Assembly: GCA_047495785.1 (NCBI GenBank) | Contig: JBLDXI010000019.1 | Span: 868,001-932,000, forward strand | DNA: 64,000 nucleotides | From: Lepidodermella squamata | Lineage: Eukaryota > Animalia > Gastrotricha | Direction of reading: 5' to 3' | In this document: piece by piece, positions 1 through 16,809 of the stretch | How the letters are laid out: each line of letters starts with the position of its first letter | Numbering within the stretch: position 1 is the stretch's first letter | The notes under the pieces: generated by a model | What the model saw: the letters and a program-made list of their open reading frames with translations, nothing else | The model's database searches: none | What the model was told of the DNA's origin: nothing | Position numbers and translations under genes: made by a program

Positions 1-3000
1 ACTGATAAGTGGCTGTGAACCCATTCGCGCTGATTGAAGGCGAGCCGGCATTCGCTACGATCGGTGGAGTGGTTTTCCGGCAATTGGGAGCTAAAATTAA
101 ATGAATTATTTTTACTCATGAAAATTCATAAAAATAAATTACTAGTAATTGAAGCTTTAAGGTAAGGATTGCCTTGAACCGAAATCGAGCTAACAGCCAC
201 TGTGCTAAAAGACCTGCGAACTCGCCGATTTCCAGTCAGTAAAGAACCGCCGGACCAAATTATATCCGAATGATTCATTGGAATTGCAAACGCTTCAACG
301 TTATCGGTAGTCAAAGGAATAGGGGCTGACGTGTCGTAGATGCTATCGTATTGTACGCCGAGAAAATCGCCAGGTAACGCTAAAATTCGGTTATTCTCAG
401 GCACGATGAAGTCCTGCTCATCGGTCGTTCGAGGGGTGAAAGTGTTGAAACCGACCAGCTGGTAAGTCCCGCCCGGTCTCGTCCGCCAGACCGTTAAATA
501 AATCGTAGTATCAGTTTCAATCGGCTTTAACCGCCATCTCCAGATATAGCCACCGCCTTGGCACTGGTTTAACGGCGAATTGGGGAATAAATACGTGTAA
601 GACGTTACTGTACGAGTCGGCCGGGTGAAATTTGTCAAACCAGCTAGGCAAGACTCGCCAGGTTGGCAGTTGACGTCAATAGGGACAGACCACGCGCCAC
701 GCGATCCACAAATCGCTCGAAAAACAGCGGATTTCGGCGACGGCTCGTAGCCTCCTCGACACGTGTAAGTGATTGATTGATTGAAATTAGCTGAATTCGC
801 ACTTGGGTCCGCATTTTCATACGACGGAGGCGGGGCCGGGCAGTTGGCGACTGAAATTTCCGCCCAGGCAGCTGGTAGAGCAATTCGAGACTCTAAGATC
901 ATTCGATCTCTTGAAATCGAATAAAACCTAGGCCCGCCGCCCATTTGATACCCGAAAACATTGCGGACTGTGTAAGCGTCCCATAGCGAGTTCAGATTAT
1001 TACCGCCTAATGACTCCCTGGTAATAGCCGATAGCAACGGGACGTCGAAAGGCGACATGTAATGCATCCCGATGACGTCATTCTGCTCGACTGGTATGAA
1101 TTCACCCGGTTTTAGAATGATAGTGTTAGTGCCTACGACACTTGGGACAACCTTCGTGAGACCAACGAGGTTATACGACGAGTCAATCAAACGCCAGACT
1201 GCTAGATAAGCTGATGCGTTGGTAGCAGGATCGGCATAGGCTGCGTAATACCGCCACTGGGTGATCATACCCGGGCAGGCGATTGGGTTGTTGTGGAAAA
1301 TGTACAAGCCCATGGATAACACCGAAAAGGTCCGGCCAGTCGGGTCGTTCCCAATCGAGCGGCAACTGGCTGGGGTGACCGCGTAGCCGCAGATCGGAGG
1401 CGTCCCGGTGAAACGATTGCCCCTCTGGCAGGTTATTGAAGCCGAACCCGCTCGAATAATACGGCCGCCTACGCAGGTGTAAGTAACACTTGAACCCAGC
1501 GCGACTGCGTCAGTGCCGTTGACAGTGGCCCAGGAGTCTTCGACGAATGGGGCGTTATCGCAGGTTTCTGACGGTGTAATGCTGGCGCTGAACATGGTCA
1601 TGCGGTAGTTAGGCATTAAAGCCCCGAAATCGAGTGGTTGACGGTTCCATGTTGTAGACATGTCAGTCAAAATATCGCTCGCGTCATACTTTCCAATGTA
1701 TACGTTGAGGAGACCAGCATCTAAAAATTGAATTTTTTAATAAGGCTTAAAGTTTAGTTAAAATTCTTCGACAAATTTCAAAAACCTGCAAGGCCATTTA
1801 TTTTTGCAATTTTTTAATAATTTGTTTGAAGTACAAATAACTAACCTGAAAAGTTTTGCGTGTAATTGCTTGCAAAGCCGAGTGTTGTAACGTTAATCGG
1901 CAGCTCTTTTGACTCGTAAAAATAGCCAATGACGTCGCCGGTTTTAACGACAATCGGAGGATTCGCAGGCACGGTGACATCCTTCAACCCGGAACCAACG
2001 TATGGTACATATTTTGTCGCGCCAACCAGGGTAAAATTGCTCGGCTGGGAAGAGGGCCGCCAGACGGCAAAATAAACCGGCTCTTCATCGTCACGAATAA
2101 AAGCTAGAAGAAAGGACATCAAAATTTGAAAAATAAACACAAAATTGCCAACCTTTCCAACTTCTGACAATGCCGTTACATTTGAATGCCAAGTTCGGGT
2201 AAACAACCGCGAAAGAGCTGCCCTCTAAAATTGTGCTGTTATACGTAAAATTCGCCCCAACCGTGCAAACTCCGCCCCTTTCCGTCACAGTCGTGGTAGT
2301 AGTAGTGGCCGTCGTCGAACTCGTTAACGTTGAGATTGTAGTAGTTCTTGAGGTCGTTTGACCAAATGGCGTGGTTGTGCTACTAGCTGTTGTAGTCTCC
2401 CGCTCTGGCCTAGTAGTTGTGGTGGTTGAAGTCGTTCGAGGGGACGTTCGAACTGTGGCATCAGTCACCACGCCACCCGTGACCGGATTGAAAGTCGGCG
2501 GGGTCCCGGGTGAAGTTGTGACAGTCGAGGGTGGCCGTTCCCCGGCGACCAATGCAAGCAACGGGTGTCTCAAGGTATAAACCTGGAACTCGTCAAGAAA
2601 TGCATAATCACCACCGATTTGGGTCGGCATATTAGTTGCATCGTACAAAGCGGCAACTGATAGGTAGACCTTATCGACATAACCGGCTCTGAACTCATCC
2701 ATACCGGCGAACGGGATGACAAATAGCTCTTTCGGCGTCTCGTAATGAGGGTAATGAATTCCCAAAACATCGAAAGCTCTAACTTGGAATTGCATATTCG
2801 AAGGGATGTTGTAAACATTTATTCCAACATTTGTCGTCCAAACTCGGTGAGTTCCAATCAGCTGCATGGTTGGCCCGATTTGCCGCCAGACGTCTAAGTA
2901 GATCACGTGAGGTGCGGTCATGCTGTAGAAAATCCATTGCTTAGTCAATCCCGTACAACCGACGGTTAGATTGAAGAAGACGTGGAGTAAGCTTGAATAG

Positions 3001-6000
3001 CTAGTTCCCGAGAATTTGTTGACATTATCGAATCGGGGAATGTTACTGCTGCACGTTAACAGACCAGGGCAAGCTGGCGGGGGAGTCCATTGCCCTTCAA
3101 TTGTGCAGTAGCTAGCTGTTGGTCCGAAAGCAGGTCCGTTGCTGCACTGGTAATTAGCGGTGAAGCCGTTGCCACTTCTCTGAGCAGCTGCTGCGGTAAT
3201 TACAGACGGGGTAGGGACATCAGCACAATCAGGGGCTAAATTTGAGAGAAATTATACAAATTAAATTTTTAAATAAATCTAAAAATTCACCCTAGATCAA
3301 AATATTTTTTAAATATTAAGAAATAAAAAAGTAAAAACTTTTAAGAAAATTTGAATAACAAATTCATCAGTTAAAAATTAAAAAAATTAAATTGAAAGAA
3401 AATTCAGGCTATTAATTTCGGGACAATTTTGCAAAAGGACGCGAATTTACAACCCAATCCATGAGCTAAGGTAGCTTCTCTTTTTCATCGAATTTTTTAA
3501 ATTTCCGAATTAATTTCAAGCTAAATTGAAACTGCAGCATAAATTATAAAAAGAATAGTTACTTGAAATCGAAGCTCTAAGCAACGGATTTCCTTGCGTT
3601 GAGACAACAGAACTCGAGACACTGACGACCCCACCGTTCCAGATTATATCCGTATGAGTGAGAGGCAACGCAAAAACTTGAACTGCATCCGCCGTAAGCG
3701 CTACCACACCTGTCGCCTCATCCGCTGATTCATAGTGAACACCGACGAAATCCCCAGGTAGGACCAAAATTCGAGCTACAGGTGGGACAATAAAGTCCTG
3801 TTCATCAGTTGATGATGCGTTGAACAGGTTCACGCCGACTAGGCGGAACGCAGCTGAACTGATTTGTCGCCAAACTGCGAGGTAAACCGGCATTTTCGTG
3901 GCAAAAGGCCTTAATCGCCAGCGCCATAGAAAACCGCCACCCTGACAGCCGGAAAAGGTGAGCCGCGGAAATAAATAGGCGTAAGATCGAACGGTTCGAA
4001 TGACAGAACTTGTTGATAAAATTCCGGCAGAACAAGACTCGCCAATTTGACATTTTATCGTATCAGGGGTCGTCCAATGACCTTCCGGTAGACAAGTTGT
4101 CGCGAAAGAGACATTTCTATTCACAGGTTCGAAACCGCCCCGGCATGTGTACGCAGCTGTTTGATTGACAACCCCGCTTAAAACCGTAGTTCTGGTGTTC
4201 GGAATTAAAGGAGGCGGGGTTGGGCAAGATGGAGTTGAAGTGGTTGCTTTCAGAGCCGGAACTGCGTACCAGGTTTTAAGATCCAGCGAAACCGATGGGT
4301 TGAAAAAATCGCCGGGGCCCCCGAGTTTGTAACCGAAAGCTGTTGTCGAGACATAAGCATTCCAAAGCTGATTTTCCGCATATTGCCCTCGATTTTGTTT
4401 TGTATTTGCCGTGATAATCGCCTCGTCAACTGCAAATTTTCAAAAAATTAAATGATAAGTTTCAACTCAGTAGAACTTACAGGGTGACATGTAGAAAAAG
4501 CCAAGGACATCTCGCTGTTGGAAAGCTATGAACTGCCCAGGTTGGAGAATTATCGAGTTCATGCCGACTGATTTCGGCGTAGCTTTCGTCAAATTCACCA
4601 GTAGATAGCTATCTGAGGCTAACGGTCGCCATACAGCCAGGAAAACCGACGCATTTCTACTTGGATCAGCGTAGGCCGCGAAATAGTCCCATTGGGTGAT
4701 GACCCCACTACAGCCGAACGGGTTGCTCGGGAAAATGTAGAAGCCAATAGGTAATACGCTGTAAGACTGGTCAGATCGCGGATTGCCGCCGAAAGATGCG
4801 CCACAGCTACTCGGCGGTAGAGCGTACGCACATTGCGGCGGGGCTGGAGACCAGTTATTGCCCGATTGGCAGGTAATGGTAGCGGATCCTGTGATTCTTG
4901 TACCCCGAACGCAGGTGTAGGTAACCGTAGCTCCTGATGGAAGCGATTGGTTGTAGTTCACAACATTAGCCTCAGCGAACTCCACAAATGGAACAGAGGG
5001 ACAAAACGGTGATCTGACTACACTCGCACTTATCGGGGTAGTAGGGTAACCCCTGATAAGCGGGCCGTTAAATTCAAGCGTTTTCGCCGGTAAAATCTGA
5101 CTGGATTTGTAACGAGCGATGTAGACGTCGTGCACGTTCAATTTGTTGTTTTTCGTCGTGTCATTTGTTACCGTTCCCATGGCGACGACTCGGGTGGCAA
5201 CTTGGTCGCTTTCGTAGAAAAATCCGATAAAATCACCGCGTTGAACGACAATTTGTTGCCTGGGATCGGTGAAGTTGTATATCCGAAAGCCGCGGCCGTC
5301 GTAAGGAACGATGAAATTAGCCCCGGCCAACTGGAATTGGTTGCTACGATTCGTTGGTCTCAGAACAGCGAGATAAAACGGTGCCTCGTCAACCCTAACG
5401 AAAGCTAAAACAACGACGAAAATTGAAAGAATAAGAAAAATTCTCAAAATTACTAGTCCAAGATCTCAGCACTCCAGAGCAAGGGAAGGTCCAATTTGGG
5501 TAGAAAACAGCGAATGAGCCGCCTTCTTGAAGTTGGTAAGAACGGTCAACGTTTTGAACCCCAGCCGAGCATGACGCGATCGGATCTGTCGTGGTCGAAG
5601 ATGTTGAAGTCGACGTGATTGCAACATTCGGCAGGCTTGTCGTAGTTTGACCCGGTGAAGTTGTAGTAGCTTGAGTTGTCGTAGTATCAACCTGCCGACC
5701 CGGAGTGATTGCACCGCTAGTTGTAGTTGTCACAAAATAAGTCCAAGTTGTAGAATCAGTGATCGATCCAGGTGTTGGTGGGGTGGTCCGTCTTGTCCGG
5801 TCTGGCATGGGAGTTGTAACCGCATCACCAGCTACTAACATCAACGCCGGGTTTCGAAGTACGTAAGACTGAAATTCTCCGATAAATGAGTACATCTGGC
5901 CCGGTTTCACTGGAAAATTGACCATGCCATACAGCCCAATCACAGTTAGATATAACCGGTCCACAATGCCCAAATTGACCTCATCAGCCCCAGCGTAGGG

Positions 6001-9000
6001 AATTACGTACAGCTCGAAGGGTGTCTTGTAATCAGAATAATGAACTCCAAGGCAGTCGGTAGGTTGGACGTCGAATTGAAATGCGTCAGGAATGTCGTAA
6101 ATGACGATACCCGTGTTATTTGCCCAAATTTTGTGAGTCCCAATTAGCATCATAGTCGGGCCCATTTGCCGCCAAACACTCAGATAGACAGTATGAGGCG
6201 CGGTGAGGCTGTAAAAAACCCACTGCTTCGTTTTGCCCGAGCAACCGACGGTTAAATTCATGAAAATATGCATGAATGTCGAGTAGCTGTAGCCAGTATA
6301 ACGAGGGACGTTCGCGAAATCTGGCATGAAACTGCCGCAGGCAATCGCTCGGCCACAAGCCGGAGGTTCAGACCACCTCGCGTCAAGGCCACATTGAATT
6401 GAGGGGGACCCGTAAATCGTACCCGGGCACTGGTAATTCGCGAAAAGGCCGTTGTTACTGATCTGAGCCGCGCCAGCATTTCTCACGACTGGGGTGGGTG
6501 TTAACGAGCAATCAGGGGATGCAACACTGGCGGACATCAAAGGTCGACCCAAAATTATACTCGCGTTGATTACGACGAATGAATTCGCCCCAATCGTGAT
6601 ATCATTCCCATCAGCGTAGTACAGCCGATTTCCAGACCAGGTTATGTTGCTATGAGATACCGGCATCGTGTAAGCTATTGAAGCTTTGTCAACGACAAGG
6701 CCTACAACTGACGATTCTGTGGAGACGTAGGAGTAATGGAATCCGATAAAATCCCCAGTTCGTACGAGAATTCGTTGCTTCGGTGGGATAATAACAAATT
6801 GATCGCCAGGCGATTTCGGGGTGAACTGGTTCACGCCGACCAGCCTTGCCCCTTGCGTCTGGCCGGGTAACGGCCGCCAAACTGCCATGAAAATAGTCCG
6901 ATCGGCGTATTGCGGCTGGATGCGCCATCTCCACAGATAGCCACCACCATTACAAGTCGAGAATTTAATATCCGGAAATAAGTAAGTCCAAGTCGCTGTG
7001 TAGAGTACACCAGGGCCGGATGATAACGACCCGGCTGAGCAGGTTTCAGCGATCCGACATGTAACAGGCGATGGAGACGACCATTGGCCGTTTCCGAGGC
7101 AAGTCACGGTAATAGGGGTTGATGAATTCGAAAGCTCAAACCCTGCTCGGCAGCGGAATGTAACCACTTGCCCGGCAGCTGCCGTGGTCGAACCAGCTGG
7201 TACAGCGTTTTCGATAACAGGTAGCGGTCCTAAGCATGCAGGTTGGCCCAGGGTTGCTCTCAAAGCCGGAAAAGCCAGTTTCGGGTAATAAGTCAGTAAG
7301 TCAATTGGTAATGAATAAAAGCCAGGGCCATTTTCCATTTGGTAACCAAATAAATTTGTAGACACGGCTGCGTCCCAGAATACGGTCGGATTCTGAGCCA
7401 GATTAACCGAGACAATAGGATTGTCATCTAGAAGCAAAAAAAGCAGATAAAATTCATTTATTCTAAAATTTTAGTAGCTAACAGGGTGACATGTGATGAA
7501 ATCCCATAACATCGCCTCTCCTAAAAGGAATAAGCTCTCCAGGCCGCAAAATTACAGTATTCAAACCAAGTCGCTTAGGAACAGCCTTTGTGAAATTGAC
7601 CCAGAGATACCGGTCTCCATTTCGGCGCCAAATCGATAGGTAAACTGAAGCGTTTCCTGTCGTGTTGAAAAACGATGCGTGATAATCCCATCTTGTGATA
7701 ACTCCATCGCAATTGATCGGATTGTTGACGAATATGTAGACACCGTTCGGAACCGGGCGATAGACTCCGAATTGCCTTGGATCATCTCCCAAGGCTTGGC
7801 ATGATCCTAGTTGGTAGTTATAGCCGCAGACGGGCAGTGGCGAGGACCAACTACCGCTTGGTTGGCAGGTTAAAATCCCCGAAGTTCCGTCAACAAATGT
7901 CGACCCGTTCGTGCAGTTGTACCGAATTGAACTGCCGACAGTTACAGTGCCGCCTGACCTGAAACTCGCCACGGCTAGGTCGACCTCAGGAACTGAGACG
8001 CAAACAGGGCGCCTTTCGACCTGGCCGCTGATCGGGGACAATCGGTACCGCCGCAACACCCCGCCGAAGTCGAGAGTTTGTTCCTGATCTACCGGTATCA
8101 ACTCCCGTTTGCTATAACCTGCGATGAAAACGTCCGTTAAATCAGTTCCGGCGTAGAAAGGCGATTCGATGATTGGCCCGTGAAAACTGAGAGCCACCAC
8201 TTCGGTTGAAGTTTCACTGCTTTCGTAGAAGTAGCCGATAATGTCACCAGCGCGAACTGTGATTTGCTCCTCCGGTTTAACCGCGTAAGTTCGACGACCG
8301 ATGCCTTCATAAGGTACGATCATATTCGCGCCGACCAGGTAAAATTTTCCTGTATCTTCCGACCGTCTCCACACAGCCATGTAAAACGGAGCCTCGGCAG
8401 CTCGAACATACACTAAAAAATATTGAATAAATCTAAATTATTTTTAATTAATGAAAAATTACTCGTCCAAGACCGAACGATCCCAGAACAAGTTATGGTC
8501 ATGTTCGGAAATACTACTGCGATCGAGCCACCCTCAATTTGCGGGTAGTAGCTTTGAACGTCTACCCCGGGATTGCAGAACGGACTCTGAGGCGTCGTTG
8601 TGGTTGGGAATGTTTGCGTTGATGGGAAAGCAGACCATGGGGCGAGAGTGGTGTCAACCTGGCGCCCGGGTGTTGGAAATGGTGACCAGCTAGTCGAAGT
8701 CCGCGATGTTGACCATGGCGCCCAATTCGACCAGCTTGTCGACGTGGTAAAACCTGAACCACCCCATGAAGTAGTGACAGGAGCAGCAGTTGTAGTGATT
8801 GAATCATCGGCTGGAACTTCGATTATTCGAGTATCTTAAAGAAAAATGCATGGCTACGCTAGATCTTCATCAATATTGCGAGCAAATTACTTGAAACACA
8901 GCCATTATCGAATGTGGTTGTTATTTCGTCAATAGCAATGTTGCTGTAAGGGGTAAGAACGCTCGTAGCTTCGAAAACCAGGACGAAGGACTGAAAATAC

Positions 9001-10320
9001 CAAAAATTAAATTAACTTATAAAAATTTCGCCGAATTTACATCAACGCCGGGAAATAAATTCGAGAGTGGAAAGCTAGCAGTAGCGTTGTTCCAGGTCTC
9101 ACGTGTCGACTGAGGGCCAACACGGCTGAAAATGAGCGATTGCGTTGGTGCAAATAAATTCCCAGATTTTTGGCGGACGTAAAGTGTTAATTTCCCTGTC
9201 GTCACGCCGAACATGTGGTAGAAAAATGCGATATTAACGCAGCCGGAGTTACTGCCGTAGTTTTGAACTGGCAGTGGCGAGCTAACTATTTTTGCTTTTT
9301 CAAAGTAATGCCCGGTCGATTCCGTATAGAGATAAGAAGCTGAAAGAAAAATAACTCATTCAAACTCAATTAGTACGGCTAAATGTCTTACGAGAGCTTG
9401 CCCTCGCTCCACTTTGAGGACCGCTCAAGGGGGTGAACGTTGGGCCAGTTTGCCAGGACCAGTCGAATGATTTGTATGGAACCGGAGTGTGCATGTTGTC
9501 AAAGCCGCACATATTATCCTCGAAATTGCAAAAATAACCGCCATTTTGAGTATTCCAATTATTGTTATCAGGTAATTCGCAGCCGCCGGGGTAAAATCTC
9601 AGTTCATCAATGGCCATATCAGACCTGGGACCTCTTCCACGAATCGCAAAAAATTCAATCTAAAGAAAAATTGGATAAAACTGACATTTAAACAATTTAA
9701 ACAATATTAATCCAGCTTACATTGAATGCATCATTCGGGGAAACAGATAGCGATATCCGTTGCCACCGATTCCCAAGAGACTGGCCTCCAAACCTTGCGA
9801 CTTCACTCCGGTTACCGACATCATTGACCAAATTTACAACCAGGAAGCCCATAGAGCTCCCGTAGAAATGAGCAGCAAATTGCAAACAACACACTTCTGA
9901 CTGACAAAATTGACGAGTAGTTCTCATGTAAGCGGTTGAGCCAAAGTCGCCCAGAGAACTATCCACGACGTACAGATAACCTGTAGAATATCACGTAAAT
10001 ATCAAAATGAAACTGAAAAAAATCGATCGAACCATCTGCTTTTCCCGTCGTGTAATCAAAACTTGGACCCGTTGGCGCTTCAACGTCGCCATAGGCAGAT
10101 GTCCACCGCCAACCGAACCCAGTTTTGTGGTAAGTAAGATCCATGTTGCATGGACCACAAGTAGCGCAGTCGCCGTTTTCGAACGAACATTGTATATCGC
10201 CGGCGACTAAAAACATGAAACGTTGTGAAATAAAGGTGATGACACGAATCTTTCAAAACCTGAGGGAATTATCACCAATAGTGCTATTACCAATTCGATC
10301 ACGAAGTATTCATCGTTCAT
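1..10320 (-). CDS. Large secreted/extracellular mosaic protein: signal peptide, 2 MAM domains, then repeats of Thr/Ser-rich linker + four ~140-aa unrecognised domains interleaved with Sushi/CCP domains; multi-exon, 3' end outside window
   Basis: Exon 1 (10320-10260) splices via a 53-nt GT-AG intron to give MNDEYFVIELVIALLVIIPSVAGDIQCSFENGDC. MAM hallmarks: CSFE..C, GP..D.T.G, C.L.F..H.YG..MG.L, MAIDE, CNFEDNMCGF. CCP hallmarks: VTYTC..G..I.GSA.ITCQ.G..WS..PP.C. The ORF-track pieces join through ~50-nt introns. Confidence 0.85.
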
Positions 10321-12042
10321 CTCGGTCAGACAAAACGACAAATATCAAGTCATATTTTTGCTGATTCAGGCAAAAAATCAGCCCCAATATAGCAGCTTAT
10401 AATTTATATGTTGCTTGGAAACATGCGCTATGCGTAGCCTCATTCACAACAGTATGAGCGGAGTCTTCAAGCAAATTTTGCTCATTTGGAATATTCATGC
10501 AGCTCAGGTATTCAGACTATCCATTCATCACTGGGCACGTCCAAAACAAATGCCGGCAAGAGCCAGTCAGTATTAAAGAAATACATCCTTTTCATTTGTA
10601 TGCGTGCACGATAGCGAATTTTTAAACTCATTTAAATTGCTTCAGAAATATTCATATTTAAGCTTAAAAGTATATTTCTCAGTTATCGAACATATGATAA
10701 ACACAGTCAATAGCTGTACATAGCCCTATCGATTTCTCATAATATAATAATAATGAAAGTGAATTTCACTTAACTCCATTCAGCTTGGTAAATCGTTTCG
10801 ATTTACATTGTCGTGCGACGAATTGTACATGCGTGAAGTCATACAAATACAAATTGGGACTTTTCGCGGAAATTTCCCGTGAAAATCGCCGTGCCCTATG
10901 CCTAGATATTTGAAAATAGGTAAATATTTGAAATCTATGAAGCCAGCGATAATTTTTACTGTAACTAAAGATCGCTGAATCCGATTATTTGTACGCAGTC
11001 ATAGCAAATTTAATCACCTACAAGGACACAAAAGCAAAGTGCAACAAAAAATCTTCAAAAAATACGATACCTACAGAAAAAATACGTTATAAAGAGCATA
11101 AGTGAGAGAAGCACTCGATTCGGAACAAACTATAAAACCATAGATGCATTTGAAATCGGCAGGAAAAAGATTCAGTTACTGAAGCGAAAGCATGCGTCAA
11201 GCATGTAGGTTGCTGTCGCTAAAACTGCGGCGAATGCTTGTAACGCAAGAAATAGCGTAAAGACTGGCATCCTTGTTCAGAGCCTCTGATTAATTCTGGG
11301 ATGAAAATTTTCACATGCATCTCAGTAGCAGCGATACCTCAGAACATCTCAATTAGCCGAAAAGGAGACAGACGGGCTTGGATGACCATCTTTCATTAAG
11401 CCGTTTCGAATTGTAACCAAGAGAAATTATTCCCAAGCAATTGCAACCTAATTGATTGCTCCCTAAAGCGCTGTGCCCTGGCATTACGACATCAAGCAGT
11501 TAACAACCAGAGTTAACGCGACAGGCAGTTTTTCCAGCAGCCACACAACATGCCACAACAGCATGCAGTAGTCTCACAAGACTCACCATCATAAGGTGTT
11601 TCTCTCGCCCTGCTCTAATATTCCCATGGAAGATAACATTTTTCATGGAGTTGAAGTCTTTCCTAACCATAGCCATCAGAGGTAATAACTGTTCTCCATT
11701 CATAGAAATTACAAAGAAACGACATAAGTATAAGTATCATCATCCTCATCATCATCATCATTTTATTGCTTACCTTCAGATTGCACCACGTTTGATTCTA
11801 TAAAAGAATAACAGTATTTAGGAATGGATTTATAAATGGGCAAAGAGAGGGCGTAAGTATGGCGACACCGTTTAAGGCAAATAGCCAACGCCGATTGATA
11901 GGGAGTAAATGCGGGAATTAAGCATATTAATGTCGCAATCACCTTCATTAAGAAATGGCGGCGGGCAATATCTCGACGTAAAGACTGAGAAACTAATGCC
12001 TGAGAAGCTATGGACCATTCGCTTTGGAGCCGCTCCGTACTT

Positions 12043-12961: not shown

Positions 12962-14672
12962 ATGGCATCATCCGCCTACAGCAGGGTTTCTCAAATCGCT
13001 CGCTTCAGTCTACCCCTCTTGCCTCTCCGAAACCGCATCGCCTTTCCTGCTTCGCAACGTTTCTTTTCGATGTCTAACGGCAATCCTCAATCGGGAAGCG
13101 TCATTTCGGTGGCGACGCTGAACCCTAACGGTATGTTCCTCCTCTAACTCATTATCCTTGCAATAATACCTAGGGAAATCAGCCTTATCACTTAACAACA
13201 CATATCATAGCTCATAGCTACATCTTTGTTTTGCATCCGATTAATAACTTGTATTTTCAGTTGTCGAGATGCAATATGCAGTTCGTGGCCCAATCGTTGC
13301 CAAAGCTGCCGAAATTGAAAAGCAACTACGAGCTGGGGAGAAGAAACCGTTTGACACTGTAATGCGAGCAAACATTGGAGACTGCCATGCTACTGGACAG
13401 CAACCGATCACATTTTTGCGTCAAGTGCTTGCACTCTGTGTGGAGCCCTCTCTGTTTGAATCAAATCTGTATCCCGAAGATGCAAAATCTCATGCCCGAG
13501 CCATTCTAGCAAGCTGCAGCGGCAAAAGCTTGGGATCGTATACTGATTCTGTTGGTTTGGAAGTTGTACGCCGTCACATTGCTGAGTATATCAAGAATCG
13601 TGATGGCGGTATCGACTCTATTCCTGAAGACATTTTTCTGTCCAATGGTGCTAGTGAATCAATCAAGGCTGTCATGCGCTTGGTAATGACAGGTCGCCAG
13701 GGAAAGGAGCGCGCGGGTGTTCTTATTCCTGTACCACGATATCCACTATACACCGCAACACTCTCCGAGTTCGGTGCCGTTCCTATCGGATATTATCTTG
13801 ATGAAGACAATGAGTGGGGACTTCAGGCTGATGAGCTTCAGCGTTCGTTGAACGAGGCACGTGGTAACTGCATTCCGCGAGCTATCGTCATAATCAACCC
13901 TGGCAATCCCACCGGCCAAGTCTTATCTGCCGAAAACATCAAGCAAATTATCAAGTTCGCGCATCGCGAGAAGCTCTTGATCTTGGCTGATGAAGTATAT
14001 CAGCATAATGTTTATGCCGAAGGCAAGCAATTCCATTCCTTCAAGAAGATTCTCCGCCAGCTTGAAGATTCTGGTGAAATCTCCAAGGGTTTGGAGCTCG
14101 CATCTTTCATGTCTACGTCTAAGGGCTACATGGGCGAGTGCGGTCTTCGTGGTGGATATTGCGAACTTGTCAACTTCAACGCTGATGTCAAGGCTCAGCT
14201 ATTCAAGAGTATTTCTGCTTCGCTCTGTTCCACTACAATTGGCCAAGCTGCAATGGATGTTGTCGTCAATCCGCCTAATGCTTCAGAGCCATCGTATGCT
14301 CAGTTTGTCAAGGAGCGAGATGCTGTTCTTGCTGGACTGAAGAAGAAGGCGAAACTTATTTCTGATACCTTCAATTCAATGCCAGGCATCAAGTGTAACC
14401 CTGTTCAGGGTGCTATGTACGCTTTCCCGCGACTGGAGCTGCCTGCGAAGGCGATTGAAGCTGCCAAGCAGAGGAATCAACAACCCGACGAGTTCTATTG
14501 CTTTGAGCTACTTGAGCAAACTGGTATTTGCGTCGTTCCTGGGTCTGGCTTCGGTCAAAGACCCGGCACTTTTCACTTTCGCACCACGATTCTGCCTCAA
14601 GTTGAAATGATTCAAGAATCGATGGAACGTTTCAAAAAGTTCCACTTGAGCTTCTTGGAAAAGTATCAATAA
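12962..14672 (+). CDS. GPT: Alanine aminotransferase (PLP-dependent); exons 12962-13130 and 13261-14672
   Basis: MQYAVRGPIV, ANIGD, INPGNPTGQ, ADEVYQ, STSKG(PLP Lys)YMGECGLRGG, VPGSGFGQ..GTFHFRTTILP. The phase-1 intron 13131-13260 joins in frame (LNPN-V-VEMQY). Confidence 0.96.
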
Positions 14673-15030: not shown

Positions 15031-16809
15031 ATGTCAATACCCCCCTCTTTCACGCTTGCCTTGTCGCTCGAGGACATTGGTCTGGAGAATATTTCGATCC
15101 CAATCACCTGCCAGCAACCTCTACCCGATGCTCCTTACAATTTAGTCAGTCGAGCGGCAGCAGCATCCGCGGCGAAAAATCGATCGTTACCGCCACCTCT
15201 ACTAATCAACGAAGCGTTACTGTCGAATTTCGAAAAGCAAACCGAAGAAGGTCGCGTTGCGTTTTCTCGAGAGAAGTGCGACCCTTTGGTAACAGCTGTT
15301 GATCCAACCGATTTTTCTAGTAAAGAAGAGTTAGTCGAGGCCTGGCGTAACCTCTATGATCACACATGGGCTGAATTCGCGTGTAAAAAGAGCAATAATG
15401 GTTCGATAGACAATAATCTAGTATCATTTGTCGACTCATATGGCGCGCTGGCGGCCTCGCCTGGTCTAACATGGATTTTCAGTGAAGTCCAGCGTCTAAC
15501 TGCAGAATGGGCGGAGCTACAAATAAAACAGCAAACCGAGGAAGATAGTCTAGAGAGTGGGCATAGAAAATTGGTTGATTCACTGGCGGTTAACGGTGCT
15601 ATCGACGCTTCCGCCATCAACCTAGCCGCGAGGGAACATATCGAGGCCAGGGAGAGGTTGAAAGCTCACCACCGAGCTGATGCTGCTGACTTGCATCGAG
15701 CTCTATCGCAAAGGCTTCGGTTGGGGGTTATCGCCAAAGCCTCAGCGTTTCGCCTCAATCGTTCTGAATCGACTCGATCACCTACAATGTCATTGAGTGG
15801 GACTAACGATCCAGATTCTCCGAGCGTTGAAGGCCGCCTACCAAGTGGTAGTGATGTTTCATTCACAGCGAGTAGTTTACGGCAAGATTGTTTCACCATC
15901 GCACTTGGGACTCAAGTAAGAAGCACGGCTAATGTGAAGTTGTTAGCTGCTGACTTGACCGATATTGTGAAGTCGGTCGCACACGTTCCAAAAGCTCAAT
16001 GGCTTCACAATATAATGACCCTATACAGCATGGACCAGTCTGCGTTGGTAGTCATGGTCGATAACGATTTATCACTATTCAGCGAGCCAATTTCAACGAT
16101 TAGATCTGCGACTAAACCAGTGCCAGAGTTGCATTTCGCTTCCTATGCTGATCAAATAAAAGAAGTCGCGAGTATTGCCCGAAAAAATCGAGTTGGTGAT
16201 CCTACGAGTGCAGACTCGCCTGTCCTGGAAGCGGGTGATTTTTTCGCGACTCGTCACTCAAATTTATCTGGGGTCGATGTAATTTTCCATTTGGTATGGT
16301 CAGAAGCCGATATGCAACGAAAACCTCAAAAATCGAACGTGTTAGACGGCGGTGAGATCACCTCCCGGCATCCAGTGATAGGCGGCCTGAGAACTCTAAT
16401 TCGAACTTGCCTTGAACATGATATCACATCGATAACTGTCCCGCTTTTGTTGACAACGTCTACGAAGCTACCTGAATCGGCTACTCTGGCTTGGTGTGCT
16501 CGCCGGGCTGAGTTGGTTCTGAAATGTATTAAAGGCTATCTACTTGAGCATACCAATAACTCTGGCGCATCTTCAACCGCGTGTTGTTTTGCGGGTGGAA
16601 TTCCGCTGGGAACAACTGCGGCTGAACTGAGTGCCCCGGGTGGTCGCACGCCAACGATTCAATTTCTGGCACCTAAAGAAGTTTCTGACGAATTATTCGC
16701 GATTTTAACGCAACAAGTTACGCAAATTTTCCGCGTCTCTTCACCTCTCGTTCTTCAAACCAGCTTAGCCAACACGCCGTCATCTTCGAATTTAGGCGAT
16801 AAGAAATAA
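15031..16809 (+). CDS. FERRY3: C12orf4 / FERRY3 (DUF2362) homolog, intronless
   Basis: FTIALGTQ, GDFFATRHSNLSGVDVIFHLV, ITSRHPVIGGLR, ITVPLLL and WCARRAELVLKCIKG match family motifs as I recall them. Confidence 0.85.
   Translation: MSIPPSFTLALSLEDIGLENISIPITCQQPLPDAPYNLVSRAAAASAAKNRSLPPPLLINEALLSNFEKQTEEGRVAFSREKCDPLVTAVDPTDFSSKEELVEAWRNLYDHTWAEFACKKSNNGSIDNNLVSFVDSYGALAASPGLTWIFSEVQRLTAEWAELQIKQQTEEDSLESGHRKLVDSLAVNGAIDASAINLAAREHIEARERLKAHHRADAADLHRALSQRLRLGVIAKASAFRLNRSESTRSPTMSLSGTNDPDSPSVEGRLPSGSDVSFTASSLRQDCFTIALGTQVRSTANVKLLAADLTDIVKSVAHVPKAQWLHNIMTLYSMDQSALVVMVDNDLSLFSEPISTIRSATKPVPELHFASYADQIKEVASIARKNRVGDPTSADSPVLEAGDFFATRHSNLSGVDVIFHLVWSEADMQRKPQKSNVLDGGEITSRHPVIGGLRTLIRTCLEHDITSITVPLLLTTSTKLPESATLAWCARRAELVLKCIKGYLLEHTNNSGASSTACCFAGGIPLGTTAAELSAPGGRTPTIQFLAPKEVSDELFAILTQQVTQIFRVSSPLVLQTSLANTPSSSNLGDKK

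What the first reader, a model, noticed from the sequence alone, without database searches (positions are those of the whole stretch)
126..8580. Unrecognised ~140-aa domain repeated 11 times in an ordered A-B-C-D/Sushi super-repeat
Seen: each module shares the pattern C..G...Y.(F)P....C.G....W......YLAVWR......LVG.......G......P...I.V..GD.IG..Y. Four subtypes recur in fixed order: A (RSW..VR..E.P.Y), B (NP..C.G.IT.W), C (C.GGG(Y/F).WRWR) and D (NLTVGC.G.TKQW). They are separated by CCP domains, and each ~3.2 kb unit starts with a Thr-rich linker. Units span ~8830-5830, ~5830-2540 and 2540 to the edge. I cannot assign the domain to a named family. Inference: an aromatic-rich beta-sandwich, possibly glycan-binding, in a giant MAM-capped adhesive, mucus or immune-recognition protein.
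Basis: partly seen in the sequence, partly recalled or inferred. Interest (0 to 1): 0.75.

Follow-up and report, generated by a model that had tools for sequence, protein, structure and literature searches.

The report
Unnamed lectin-like domain, giant secreted protein
A small-intron invertebrate encodes a roughly 8,000-residue secreted protein built from 28 copies of a ~170-residue sugar-binding-type beta-sandwich domain that no protein-family database names, although it occurs in many marine animals and in some bacteria.

Summary
Window 126-8835 (minus strand) holds 11 related modules in the order A-B-C-D, A-B-C-D, A-B-C. Sushi/CCP domains separate them, a Thr-rich linker precedes each A, and two MAM domains sit upstream.

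Corrections to the finding:
- The module is 165-180 aa, not 140.
- The gene runs 15 kb past the window edge: signal-like peptide, 2 MAM, then 7 x (linker-A-CCP-B-CCP-C-CCP-D). That is 28 modules, with a stop right after D7 and no membrane anchor.

No window module matches Pfam, NCBIfam or PDB sequences. A profile search of 1.84 billion proteins finds 722 relatives. All named ones are "uncharacterized" (molluscs, annelid, nemertean) except one "polycystin-1-like" (hemichordate). Some relatives are bacterial: signal peptide, one module, PEP-CTERM anchor (hhalign 99.6%).

AlphaFold (pLDDT 92) gives a jelly-roll sandwich. It is closest to the Cwp84 "lectin-like" domain, an esterase CBM-like domain and phage tail-tip domains (Z 8-9.7). 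Kinship with Pfam DUF4082 is hinted at by three weak lines but not proven.

Verdict: an undescribed domain family of a known fold class, expanded here to at least 147 exon-level copies. Multivalent glycan or surface binding is inferred, not shown. No earlier scan note covers it.

The parts
10260..10320 (-). Candidate first exon: ATG plus a hydrophobic signal-like peptide. A 47-bp GT..AG intron (about 10259-10213) joins it in frame to MAM1.
   Evidence: The n-region is acidic, and no signal-peptide predictor was run.
9369..10212 (-). MAM domain 1, spread over three exons
   Evidence: Pfam PF00629 hits on exon pieces; canonical introns
8892..9355 (-). MAM domain 2. It includes a small exon (about 8892-8990) carrying the NIAIDEI motif, joined by a 56-bp intron to linker 1.
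8587..8835 (-). Thr/Ser/Pro-rich linker 1 (T 25%, S 16%, P 12%)
8006..8586 (-). Module A1, split by a 50-bp intron (8462-8413) after the C-x-G-x-VRSW strand
7484..7816 (-). Module B1, N-terminal two thirds. It continues in the next exon after the 55-bp intron 7482-7428. The CCP domain between A1 and B1 lies at about 7817-8005.
6514..7053 (-). Module C1 (180 aa, one exon); a CCP domain lies upstream at about 7054-7250
5824..6351 (-). Module D1 (176 aa, one exon), the module that was modelled; a divergent CCP lies upstream at 6352-6513
5584..5823 (-). Thr-rich linker 2 (T 39%). It lies in the same exon as D1 and the start of A2, so the units belong to one gene.
5007..5583 (-). Module A2, split by a 49-bp intron (5453-5405)
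4482..4820 (-). Module B2, N-terminal part; the 51-bp intron 4480-4430 follows
3558..4046 (-). Module C2 (163 aa)
2535..3065 (-). Module D2 (177 aa)
2280..2534 (-). Thr-rich linker 3 (T 45%)
1844..2279 (-). Module A3, split by a 49-bp intron (2152-2104)
843..1376 (-). Module B3 (178 aa, unsplit)
138..662 (-). Module C3 (175 aa). The gene goes on past window base 1 to G000:C19:853197 (D3, then units 4-7).

Best explanation
This is one intact minus-strand gene of about 25 kb (G000:C19:853197-878320). It encodes a secreted, mucin-linked giant protein of roughly 8,000 residues: a signal-like peptide, two MAM domains, then seven copies of a super-repeat. Each super-repeat is a Thr-rich, presumably O-glycosylated linker followed by A-CCP-B-CCP-C-CCP-D. 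A, B, C and D are four old, separately conserved subtypes of one ~170-residue domain. The domain is a jelly-roll beta-sandwich of the galactose-binding-domain/CBM-like class. A disulfide (C5-C37 in D1 numbering) is inferred to staple it. Its signature is C..C-x-G-x4-W ... VWR ... L-[VI]-G-x-N ... G ... V-x3-D-x2-G-x2-Y. The domain belongs to an undescribed family found in sponges, annelids, molluscs, nemerteans and hemichordates. Some bacteria carry a cysteine-free form as a single-domain PEP-CTERM surface protein. The family is probably a distant branch of the DUF4082 / Cwp84 lectin-like / phage tail-tip sandwich group. Inferred mechanism, not shown: 28 binding modules are held apart by rigid CCP spacers and extended glycosylated linkers, giving a multivalent binder of carbohydrate-rich surfaces such as the animal's own matrix or mucus, or microbes. 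Four specificities would recur in a fixed order. My confidence is about 0.9 for the gene structure, the fold class and the family, and about 0.35 for glycan or surface binding.
For: Gene model:
- Open exons and canonical short introns.
- D(n), the linker and the start of A(n+1) share one exon.
- A stop follows D7 directly, with no transmembrane segment.
- Hydrophobic N-terminal exon.

Constraint: synonymous sites between copies are saturated (pS 0.75-0.8) while pN is 0.25-0.39. D3-D5 has dN/dS of about 0.11, and there are no internal stops.

Subtypes: identity is 45-64% within a type and 21-32% between types.

No named family fits: Pfam, NCBIfam; PDB.

Relatives:
- 722 at E<=1e-3 and 127 at E<=1e-10.
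- Named ones are 'uncharacterized' in Ylistrum, Haliotis x3, Babylonia, Owenia and Tubulanus, and 'polycystin-1-like' in Ptychodera.
- The atlas places C1 next to unnamed annelid and sponge clusters at 0.97.
- Bacterial PEP-CTERM members match at hhalign 99.6%, E 3.7e-24, and occur in Fimbriimonadales genomes.

Fold:
- AF2 pLDDT 92.3, pTM 0.88.
- VIA Z 8.0-9.7 over 139-152 residues to the PBCV-1 minor capsid protein, Bxb1 tail tip, PbeAcXE CBM-like domain, Cwp84 lectin-like domain, phi812 baseplate and PVA esterase. Generic CBM, F-lectin and PHR domains follow at Z 5-6.5.
- Foldseek against BFVD gives 4 hits at E<=1e-3, all to phage proteins; the named ones include a neck passage structure protein, and minor tail proteins follow just below that threshold.

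DUF4082 hints: P0112 scores 25.8 bits, E 1.2e-5. The only genome-wide PF13313 hit falls inside a module copy. The atlas's nearest named neighbours are DUF4082/Lectin_like phage clusters at 0.90-0.91.

The signature is conserved over 178 instances.
Against: - No binding, expression or localisation data exist.
- The closest structural neighbours are themselves poorly characterised. The Cwp84 authors leave the domain's function open and note that the usual sugar site is missing (PMC4089489). The AcXE CBM-like domain contributes only three ligand-contacting residues at a domain interface (PMC9105624).
- The same fold also serves protein binding (PHR, IFT25).
- The DUF4082 link failed a profile-profile test with a thin four-sequence profile (probability 2.7%, P 0.017).
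- The signal peptide has an acidic n-region and was not checked with a predictor.
- The spliced protein was not assembled, so exon joins are inferred from splice signals only.
Confidence: 0.6

Rival explanations
1. The module is simply a divergent DUF4082 (PF13313) domain. It would then be a member of an already catalogued family of unknown function, not an unrecognised domain.
For: One animal-type relative (P0112) hits PF13313 at E 1.2e-5 over residues that overlap the module match. Three of 112 relatives hit it weakly. The single genome-wide PF13313 hit (19.1 bits) lies in a module copy at C55:515683-515934. The atlas's nearest named clusters are DUF4082/Lectin_like. The hhalign register places G-x-I-x2-W-x-FYS..VWR against G-x-V-x-G-x-RFYK..LW.
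Against: No window module, and none of the 27 modules from this genome that were scanned, reaches even E<=5 against PF13313. No hit anywhere passes the 28.4-bit cut-off. hhalign against genuine DUF4082 sequences gives probability 2.7%. The bacterial PEP-CTERM branch does not hit PF13313 either. At best this is superfamily-level kinship.
Confidence: 0.3
2. The modules are protein-protein interaction or purely structural units of an extracellular matrix, cuticle, egg-coat or cell-aggregation polymer, and are not glycan binders.
For: The same fold class includes the protein-binding PHR and IFT25 domains (PMC4089489). MAM domains mediate protein oligomerisation (established knowledge of meprin and MAM-domain receptor-type protein tyrosine phosphatases). 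Partner domains in relatives include PAN, SEA, EB, kringle, Kunitz and astacin, which is typical of matrix and protease-network proteins. One bacterial relative weakly resembles the flocculation protein PepA.
Against: The best fold matches are CBM-like or lectin-like domains and phage domains that recognise the host surface. Four conserved subtypes held in fixed order suggest distinct ligands rather than a uniform structural repeat.
Confidence: 0.25
3. The array is a decaying repeat, a pseudogene or an assembly artefact, not a functional gene.
For: Long tandem repeats are prone to mis-assembly. The A5 envelope is short, and A7 is broken between two frames at about C55... no: at about C19:855660-855678.
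Against: There are no stops in any module exon. Copies are 32-86% identical with saturated synonymous sites and pN far below pS, which is the opposite of recent artefactual duplication or neutral decay. Splice sites are conserved in phase. Relatives exist in many phyla.
Confidence: 0.03

Closest known systems
Cwp84 'lectin-like' domain (Pfam PF18560; PDB 4ci7), Clostridioides difficile S-layer protease
   Same: A jelly-roll sandwich of about 170 residues in an extracellular protein. VIA Z 9.0, rmsd 3.4 over 145 residues; Foldseek probability 0.94-0.97; atlas neighbour at 0.87-0.88.
   Different: There is no detectable sequence match. Cwp84 has a Ca2+ site and packs against a protease domain, and its own function is unknown (PMC4089489). 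The animal module has a Cys pair and is strung in arrays with CCP domains.
DUF4082 (Pfam PF13313), bacterial and phage surface proteins
   Same: Same approximate size and the same order of conserved strands. Sub-threshold HMM hits in a bridging relative and in one copy in this genome. Nearest named atlas clusters.
   Different: No module reaches the Pfam cut-off, and hhalign with genuine DUF4082 is not significant. DUF4082 lacks the VWR / L-V-G-x-N / G-D-x-I-G-x-x-Y signature and the Cys pair.
N-terminal CBM-like domain of FjoAcXE/PbeAcXE acetyl-xylan esterases (PDB 7tog, 7tok)
   Same: VIA Z 9.4 over 147 residues, covering the whole domain 9-175. That domain is also unclassified among CBM families, and it contacts a sugar ligand through three residues (PMC9105624).
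   Different: It is bacterial, fused to an SGNH esterase, and binds ligand at the inter-domain interface. There is no sequence similarity.
Distal domains of phage tail-tip, minor-tail, neck-passage and capsid-decoration proteins (Bxb1 9d93_Pa, Douge gp20, phi812 baseplate, cyanophage A4 9jwb_Z, PBCV-1 8h2i_bG)
   Same: These are the best fold matches in both PDB and BFVD. They sit on exposed tips that recognise cell surfaces.
   Different: The similarity is in fold only (8-14% identity). They are viral proteins, often trimeric, with no CCP or MAM context.
Bacterial single-domain PEP-CTERM proteins (P0109, P0118, P0123, P0136; Fimbriimonadales)
   Same: True homologues: hmmsearch E 1e-10 to 1e-11 against 1.84 billion proteins, and hhalign 99.6%. 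They share the W / VWR / LIGQN / D-x-x-G-F core.
   Different: They have no Cys pair and only one module, and are anchored through an exosortase PEP-CTERM signal. They are not covered by a named NCBIfam model above cut-off; the FxDxF family is the closest at 28.4 bits against a cut-off of 50.
Multi-CCP mosaic proteins of animals (for example SVEP1 and CSMD-type proteins, complement regulators)
   Same: CCP domains serve as spacers between binding modules in very large secreted or surface proteins. This comparison rests on established knowledge and was not tested here.
   Different: Those proteins alternate CCP with CUB, EGF, VWA or pentraxin domains. None is known to carry this module, and the four-type ordered super-repeat was not found in any relative.

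Membership tests
Pfam DUF4082 (PF13313) | Match to the Pfam HMM at or above the gathering score (28.4 bits) | tested here: not met
   None of the 27 modules from this genome in A2 hits it at E<=5. The six-frame genome-wide best is 19.1 bits. The best relative, P0112, scores 25.8 bits.
Pfam DUF4082 (PF13313) | Profile-profile homology to genuine members | tested here: inconclusive
   hhalign A2 against A5 (4 genuine instances) gives probability 2.7%, P 0.017, over 41 columns in a plausible register. The DUF4082 profile was very thin.
Pfam Lectin_like (PF18560, Cwp84) | Match to the Pfam HMM | tested here: not met
   No hit.
Pfam Lectin_like (PF18560, Cwp84) | Same fold as the solved domain (4ci7 residues 331-496) | tested here: met
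   VIA Z 9.0, rmsd 3.4, 145 aligned residues.
Pfam Lectin_like (PF18560, Cwp84) | Ca2+-coordinating residues | not tested
Galactose-binding-domain-like / CBM jelly-roll fold class | Two-sheet jelly-roll beta-sandwich | tested here: met
   The AF2 model has pLDDT 92.3 and is almost all beta-strand with three short helices. Z 5-9.7 to CBM32/35/36, F-lectin, discoidin, PHR and AcXE CBM-like domains.
Galactose-binding-domain-like / CBM jelly-roll fold class | Demonstrated carbohydrate binding | not testable with these tools
   Needs glycan arrays or ITC with recombinant modules.
Sushi/CCP (PF00084), spacer domains | Pfam HMM above cut-off; four-Cys pattern | tested here: met
   and PDB CCP hits. 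The third CCP of most units is divergent and sub-threshold.
MAM (PF00629), N-terminal cap | Pfam HMM above cut-off | tested here: met
   36.4 and 33.8 bits on exon pieces. C-terminal motifs lie on neighbouring exons.
PEP-CTERM exosortase substrates (TIGR02595) | C-terminal PEP motif, transmembrane helix and basic tail | tested here: not met
   The window protein ends directly after D7. Only the bacterial relatives carry the signal.
Secreted gel-forming or tethered mucins | Long Pro/Thr/Ser-rich O-glycosylation regions | tested here: inconclusive
   The linkers are T 25-45%, S 11-16%, P 10-12% but only about 80 residues each. No VWD, CK or SEA domains are present in this gene.

The most novel reading that the evidence does not exclude
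The module defines a previously unrecognised, animal-wide class of lectins or pattern-recognition domains. It shares ancestry with bacterial exosortase-anchored surface proteins and with phage receptor-binding tips, possibly through ancient transfer between bacteria and early animals. In this lineage it has expanded to well over a hundred copies. The fixed A-B-C-D order would give a combinatorial, multivalent reader of microbial or matrix glycans, which would be a new arm of invertebrate surface recognition.
Probability: 0.15. Interest if true: 0.75.

Novelty: new variant of a known kind. Interest (0 to 1): 0.5.

Why it matters
If the family is confirmed, it fills a blank in the annotation of marine invertebrate proteomes. 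Hundreds of large "uncharacterized" extracellular proteins in sponges, annelids, molluscs, nemerteans and hemichordates would gain a defined domain with a confident fold and a testable binding hypothesis.

The homology with bacterial PEP-CTERM surface proteins, and the fold kinship with phage tail tips, link animal extracellular recognition modules to microbial surface-binding modules.

The large expansion in this genome (at least 147 exon-level copies), together with the strictly ordered four-type super-repeat kept under purifying selection, points to a functionally important system that diversifies ligands. Possible roles are adhesion, mucus, or host-microbe recognition. The family merits a Pfam entry and a structure.

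Tried and rejected
- The word-indexed homologue search with the 680-aa exon found nothing. With the A2 profile it found only 5 unnamed short proteins. The length window and word index make it insensitive for a domain embedded in giant proteins.
- The first AF2 run used a 6-row alignment and gave a poor model (pLDDT 63). Its weak TNF/C1q-like Foldseek hits were discarded after the 51-row alignment gave pLDDT 92 and a different, consistent neighbour set.
- A DUF7323 hit (E 0.086 to 0.002) is short, sub-threshold and not reproducible across modules. I rejected it.
- HRM hits overlap the CCP domains and are cross-matches.
- PDB sequence searches with a genuine DUF4082 sequence and with the bacterial profile gave nothing, so the DUF4082 sequence family could not be tied to the fold hits.
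- The A/B/C/D types were sought in relatives and have no clear counterparts.
Earlier notes call the organism an unidentified small-intron invertebrate.
- The window is not human.


Full report
**1. The observation**

Translating the minus strand of window 1-12000 gives a chain of long open frames (8835-8416, 8437-7481, 7470-5398, 5465-4470, 4439-3519, 3251-2094, 2224-1844, 1736-129). Each neighbouring pair can be joined by a frame-preserving GT..AG intron. Five of these are 49-55 bp and two are longer, about 125 and 297 bp.

The frames contain 11 copies of one module in the order A1 B1 C1 D1 A2 B2 C2 D2 A3 B3 C3. A profile of six single-exon modules recovers every module of the gene. Single-exon modules score iE 1e-27 to 1e-68, and intron-split modules score more weakly piece by piece.

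Mean identity is 45-64% within a subtype and 21-32% between subtypes, so the four subtypes and their fixed order are real. Two corrections apply. Second, A modules are interrupted by a phase-conserved intron after the C-x-G-x-VRSW strand. A7 lacks that intron, which shows that the two halves form one domain.

**2. The whole gene**

The window is G000:C19:868001-932000. The flank I fetched shows the array continuing to C19:853197, for seven super-repeats and 28 modules. Off-window exons again contain only Sushi domains plus the unmatched modules.

D(n), the linker and the first half of A(n+1) lie in one exon, so the units belong to a single gene. The last exon stops immediately after D7, with no hydrophobic segment. 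The next genes downstream are three tandem Cys-loop-channel-like ORFs.

Upstream there are two MAM domains. The C-terminal motif of MAM2 sits on a small exon (about 8892-8990), which a 56-bp intron joins in frame to linker 1. An ATG at 10320 opens a short exon encoding a hydrophobic, signal-like peptide, and a 47-bp intron joins it in frame to MAM1. All searches were run exon by exon, by reference, and the joined step was left out.

**3. Is it a live gene?**

No module exon contains a stop. Between copies of the same subtype, synonymous sites are saturated (pS 0.75-0.8) while pN is 0.25-0.39. The one unsaturated pair, D3-D5, gives dN/dS of about 0.11. The duplications are therefore old, and each copy has been kept under purifying selection. 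This excludes a recent assembly artefact or neutral decay.

**4. What the module is not**

- Pfam-A (24,736 models) matches only Sushi, MAM and, spuriously, HRM on the CCP domains. No window module matches anything, even at E<=5.
- NCBIfam gives nothing.
- PDB sequence searches with an exon and with a 51-sequence profile find only CCP chains, or nothing.

**5. Relatives**

An exhaustive profile search of 1.84 billion cluster representatives finds 722 proteins at E<=1e-3, 127 at E<=1e-10 and 18 at E<=1e-30. The named ones are all "uncharacterized" or loosely named:

- *Ylistrum balloti* XP_060070288.1 (4303 aa, 21-22 near-identical modules)
- three *Haliotis* species
- *Babylonia areolata*
- *Owenia fusiformis*
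- *Tubulanus polymorphus*
- *Ptychodera flava* "polycystin-1-like"

The protein atlas places C1 next to unnamed annelid and sponge clusters at 0.97. Partner domains in relatives are Sushi (the commonest), PAN, SEA, EB, kringle, Kunitz, LDLa, and astacin-ApeC-CUB-kringle-C-lectin mosaics. Pfam never covers the module region.

Within this genome the profile finds at least 147 exon-level matches on more than 15 contigs, often alternating with Sushi and sometimes ending in Cys-rich EB/EGF-like tails. The A/B/C/D subtypes have no clear counterparts in other species, so the ordered super-repeat looks lineage-specific.

Over 178 domain instances in the relatives, the signature is conserved as follows:

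| Position (D1 numbering) | Conserved in |
|---|---|
| W44 | 96% |
| G102 | 95% |
| G39 | 93% |
| R61 | 93% |
| D99 | 91% |
| G71 | 84% |
| W60 | 81% |
| G81 | 81% |
| C37 | 79% (a partner Cys 15-45 residues upstream in 125 of those 140) |

**6. A bacterial branch**

Four relatives (P0109, P0118, P0123, P0136) consist of a signal peptide, one module and a PEP-CTERM anchor. Three of them pass the TIGR02595 cut-off. They keep the W / VWR / LIGQN / D-x-x-G-F core but lack the Cys pair. hhalign of the animal alignment against them gives 99.6% probability and E 3.7e-24 over 110 columns. tblastn finds such genes in Fimbriimonadales (Armatimonadota) genomes. One of them has sub-threshold similarity to the NCBIfam "FxDxF family PEP-CTERM protein" model and to the flocculation protein PepA. 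The domain is therefore not an animal invention.

**7. Fold**

With a 51-row alignment, AlphaFold2 models D1 at mean pLDDT 92.3 and pTM 0.88, as a nearly all-beta domain.

VIA-align against 48,161 PDB representatives gives a leading group at Z 8.0-9.7 over 139-152 residues:

- PBCV-1 minor capsid protein
- Bxb1 tail tip
- PbeAcXE N-terminal CBM-like domain
- Cwp84 lectin-like domain
- phi812 baseplate protein
- PVA esterase N-terminal domain
- cyanophage A4 capsid-associated chain

PHR (Z 6.5), F-lectins (5.9) and CBM32/35/36, discoidin and neuropilin b domains (about 5) follow. Foldseek ranks the same entries first in the PDB, though none passes E<=1e-3. In BFVD it finds 4 hits at E<=1e-3 and many more at probability 1.00, among phage minor-tail, neck-passage and tail-fibre proteins.

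The fold is a galactose-binding-domain/CBM-like jelly-roll. The tool notes that a best Z of 7-8 is common by chance, so Z 9-9.7 is moderate rather than decisive evidence for a specific relationship.

**8. The DUF4082 question**

Three weak lines point to Pfam DUF4082/Lectin_like:

- A bridging relative, P0112, matches my profile at 2e-11 and PF13313 at 1.2e-5 (25.8 bits; cut-off 28.4) over overlapping residues.
- The only six-frame PF13313 hit in the 121-Mb genome (19.1 bits) lies inside a module copy.
- The atlas's nearest named clusters for C1 and D1 are phage DUF4082/Lectin_like, Cwp84 Lectin_like and PHR.

Against this, hhalign with four genuine DUF4082 instances from Armatimonadota is not significant (probability 2.7%, P 0.017), although the register is sensible. 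The bacterial branch does not hit PF13313 either. I therefore do not file the module as DUF4082. Superfamily-level kinship is plausible, at about 0.3-0.5.

**9. Function (inferred)**

The architecture suggests a multivalent extracellular binder: a signal-like peptide, oligomerising MAM domains, 28 sandwich modules spaced by CCP rods and short mucin-like linkers, and no anchor. The nearest folds are carbohydrate-associated or recognise cell surfaces, but their own evidence is thin. The Cwp84 authors leave the function open and note that the canonical sugar site is absent (PMC4089489). In PbeAcXE, three CBM-like residues contact the MeGlcpA side group at a domain interface (PMC9105624). The same fold class also mediates protein binding (PHR, IFT25). 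I put glycan or surface binding at about 0.35, a protein-binding or structural matrix role at about 0.25, and leave the rest open.

**10. Novelty and verdict**

It needs the corrections above on length, copy number and phyletic range. The fold class is known. The family itself, its cysteine-stapled animal form, its bacterial PEP-CTERM cousins, its large expansion here and the four-type ordered repeat appear to be undescribed. Literature searches found nothing on it, and no earlier scan note covers it. I classify it as a new variant of a known kind, with interest 0.5.

Noticed in passing
L031:1-4436 (G000:C19:848001-852436), minus strand: Three tandem, apparently single-exon ORFs (415-448 aa) lie immediately downstream of the giant gene. 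Each has an N-terminal signal-like peptide, an extracellular domain and C-terminal hydrophobic helices. They look like Cys-loop ligand-gated-channel-type receptors.
   Followed up: no
G000:C15:4.98-5.04 Mb; C55:0.10-0.15 and 0.515-0.53 Mb; C19:0.50, 0.74, 2.48-2.52, 2.83, 3.24 and 3.43 Mb; also C13, C21, C32, C7, C74: There are at least 110 further exon-level copies of the same module in many gene clusters. They usually alternate with Sushi domains. This is a major lineage-specific expansion.
   Followed up: partly
L026:1-2187:- and L027:121-1887:-: Paralogous module-Sushi genes end in a Cys-rich tail that resembles EB/EGF modules. This is a different C-terminal architecture from the window gene.
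   Followed up: partly
P0005 (Ylistrum balloti XP_060070288.1): The scallop relative carries about 21 almost identical modules in tandem, all with the same type scores. This is a recent homogeneous array, unlike the old four-type repeat here.
   Followed up: partly
P0060, P0131 (EukProt transcriptome proteins, about 1,700 aa): These relatives come from EukProt transcriptomes and lack the conserved Cys37. They may come from non-animal eukaryotes, which would widen the family's range.
   Followed up: no
P0136 (bacterial relative): It has sub-threshold similarity to NCBIfam NF038126 (FxDxF family PEP-CTERM protein; 28.4 bits against a cut-off of 50) and to NF033554 (flocculation-associated PepA). 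This may be a functional lead towards cell aggregation or exopolysaccharide binding.
   Followed up: partly
window 6352-6513, and the equivalent position in each unit: The third CCP of each super-repeat, between C and D, is divergent. It keeps four Cys but falls below the Pfam Sushi threshold in most units.
   Followed up: partly
window 13269-14672 (+) and 15031-16809 (+): An apparently intronless 467-aa aminotransferase-like ORF lies here, next to a 592-aa ORF that I could not identify by eye. They sit between the giant gene and a CCT-chaperonin-like gene.
   Followed up: no
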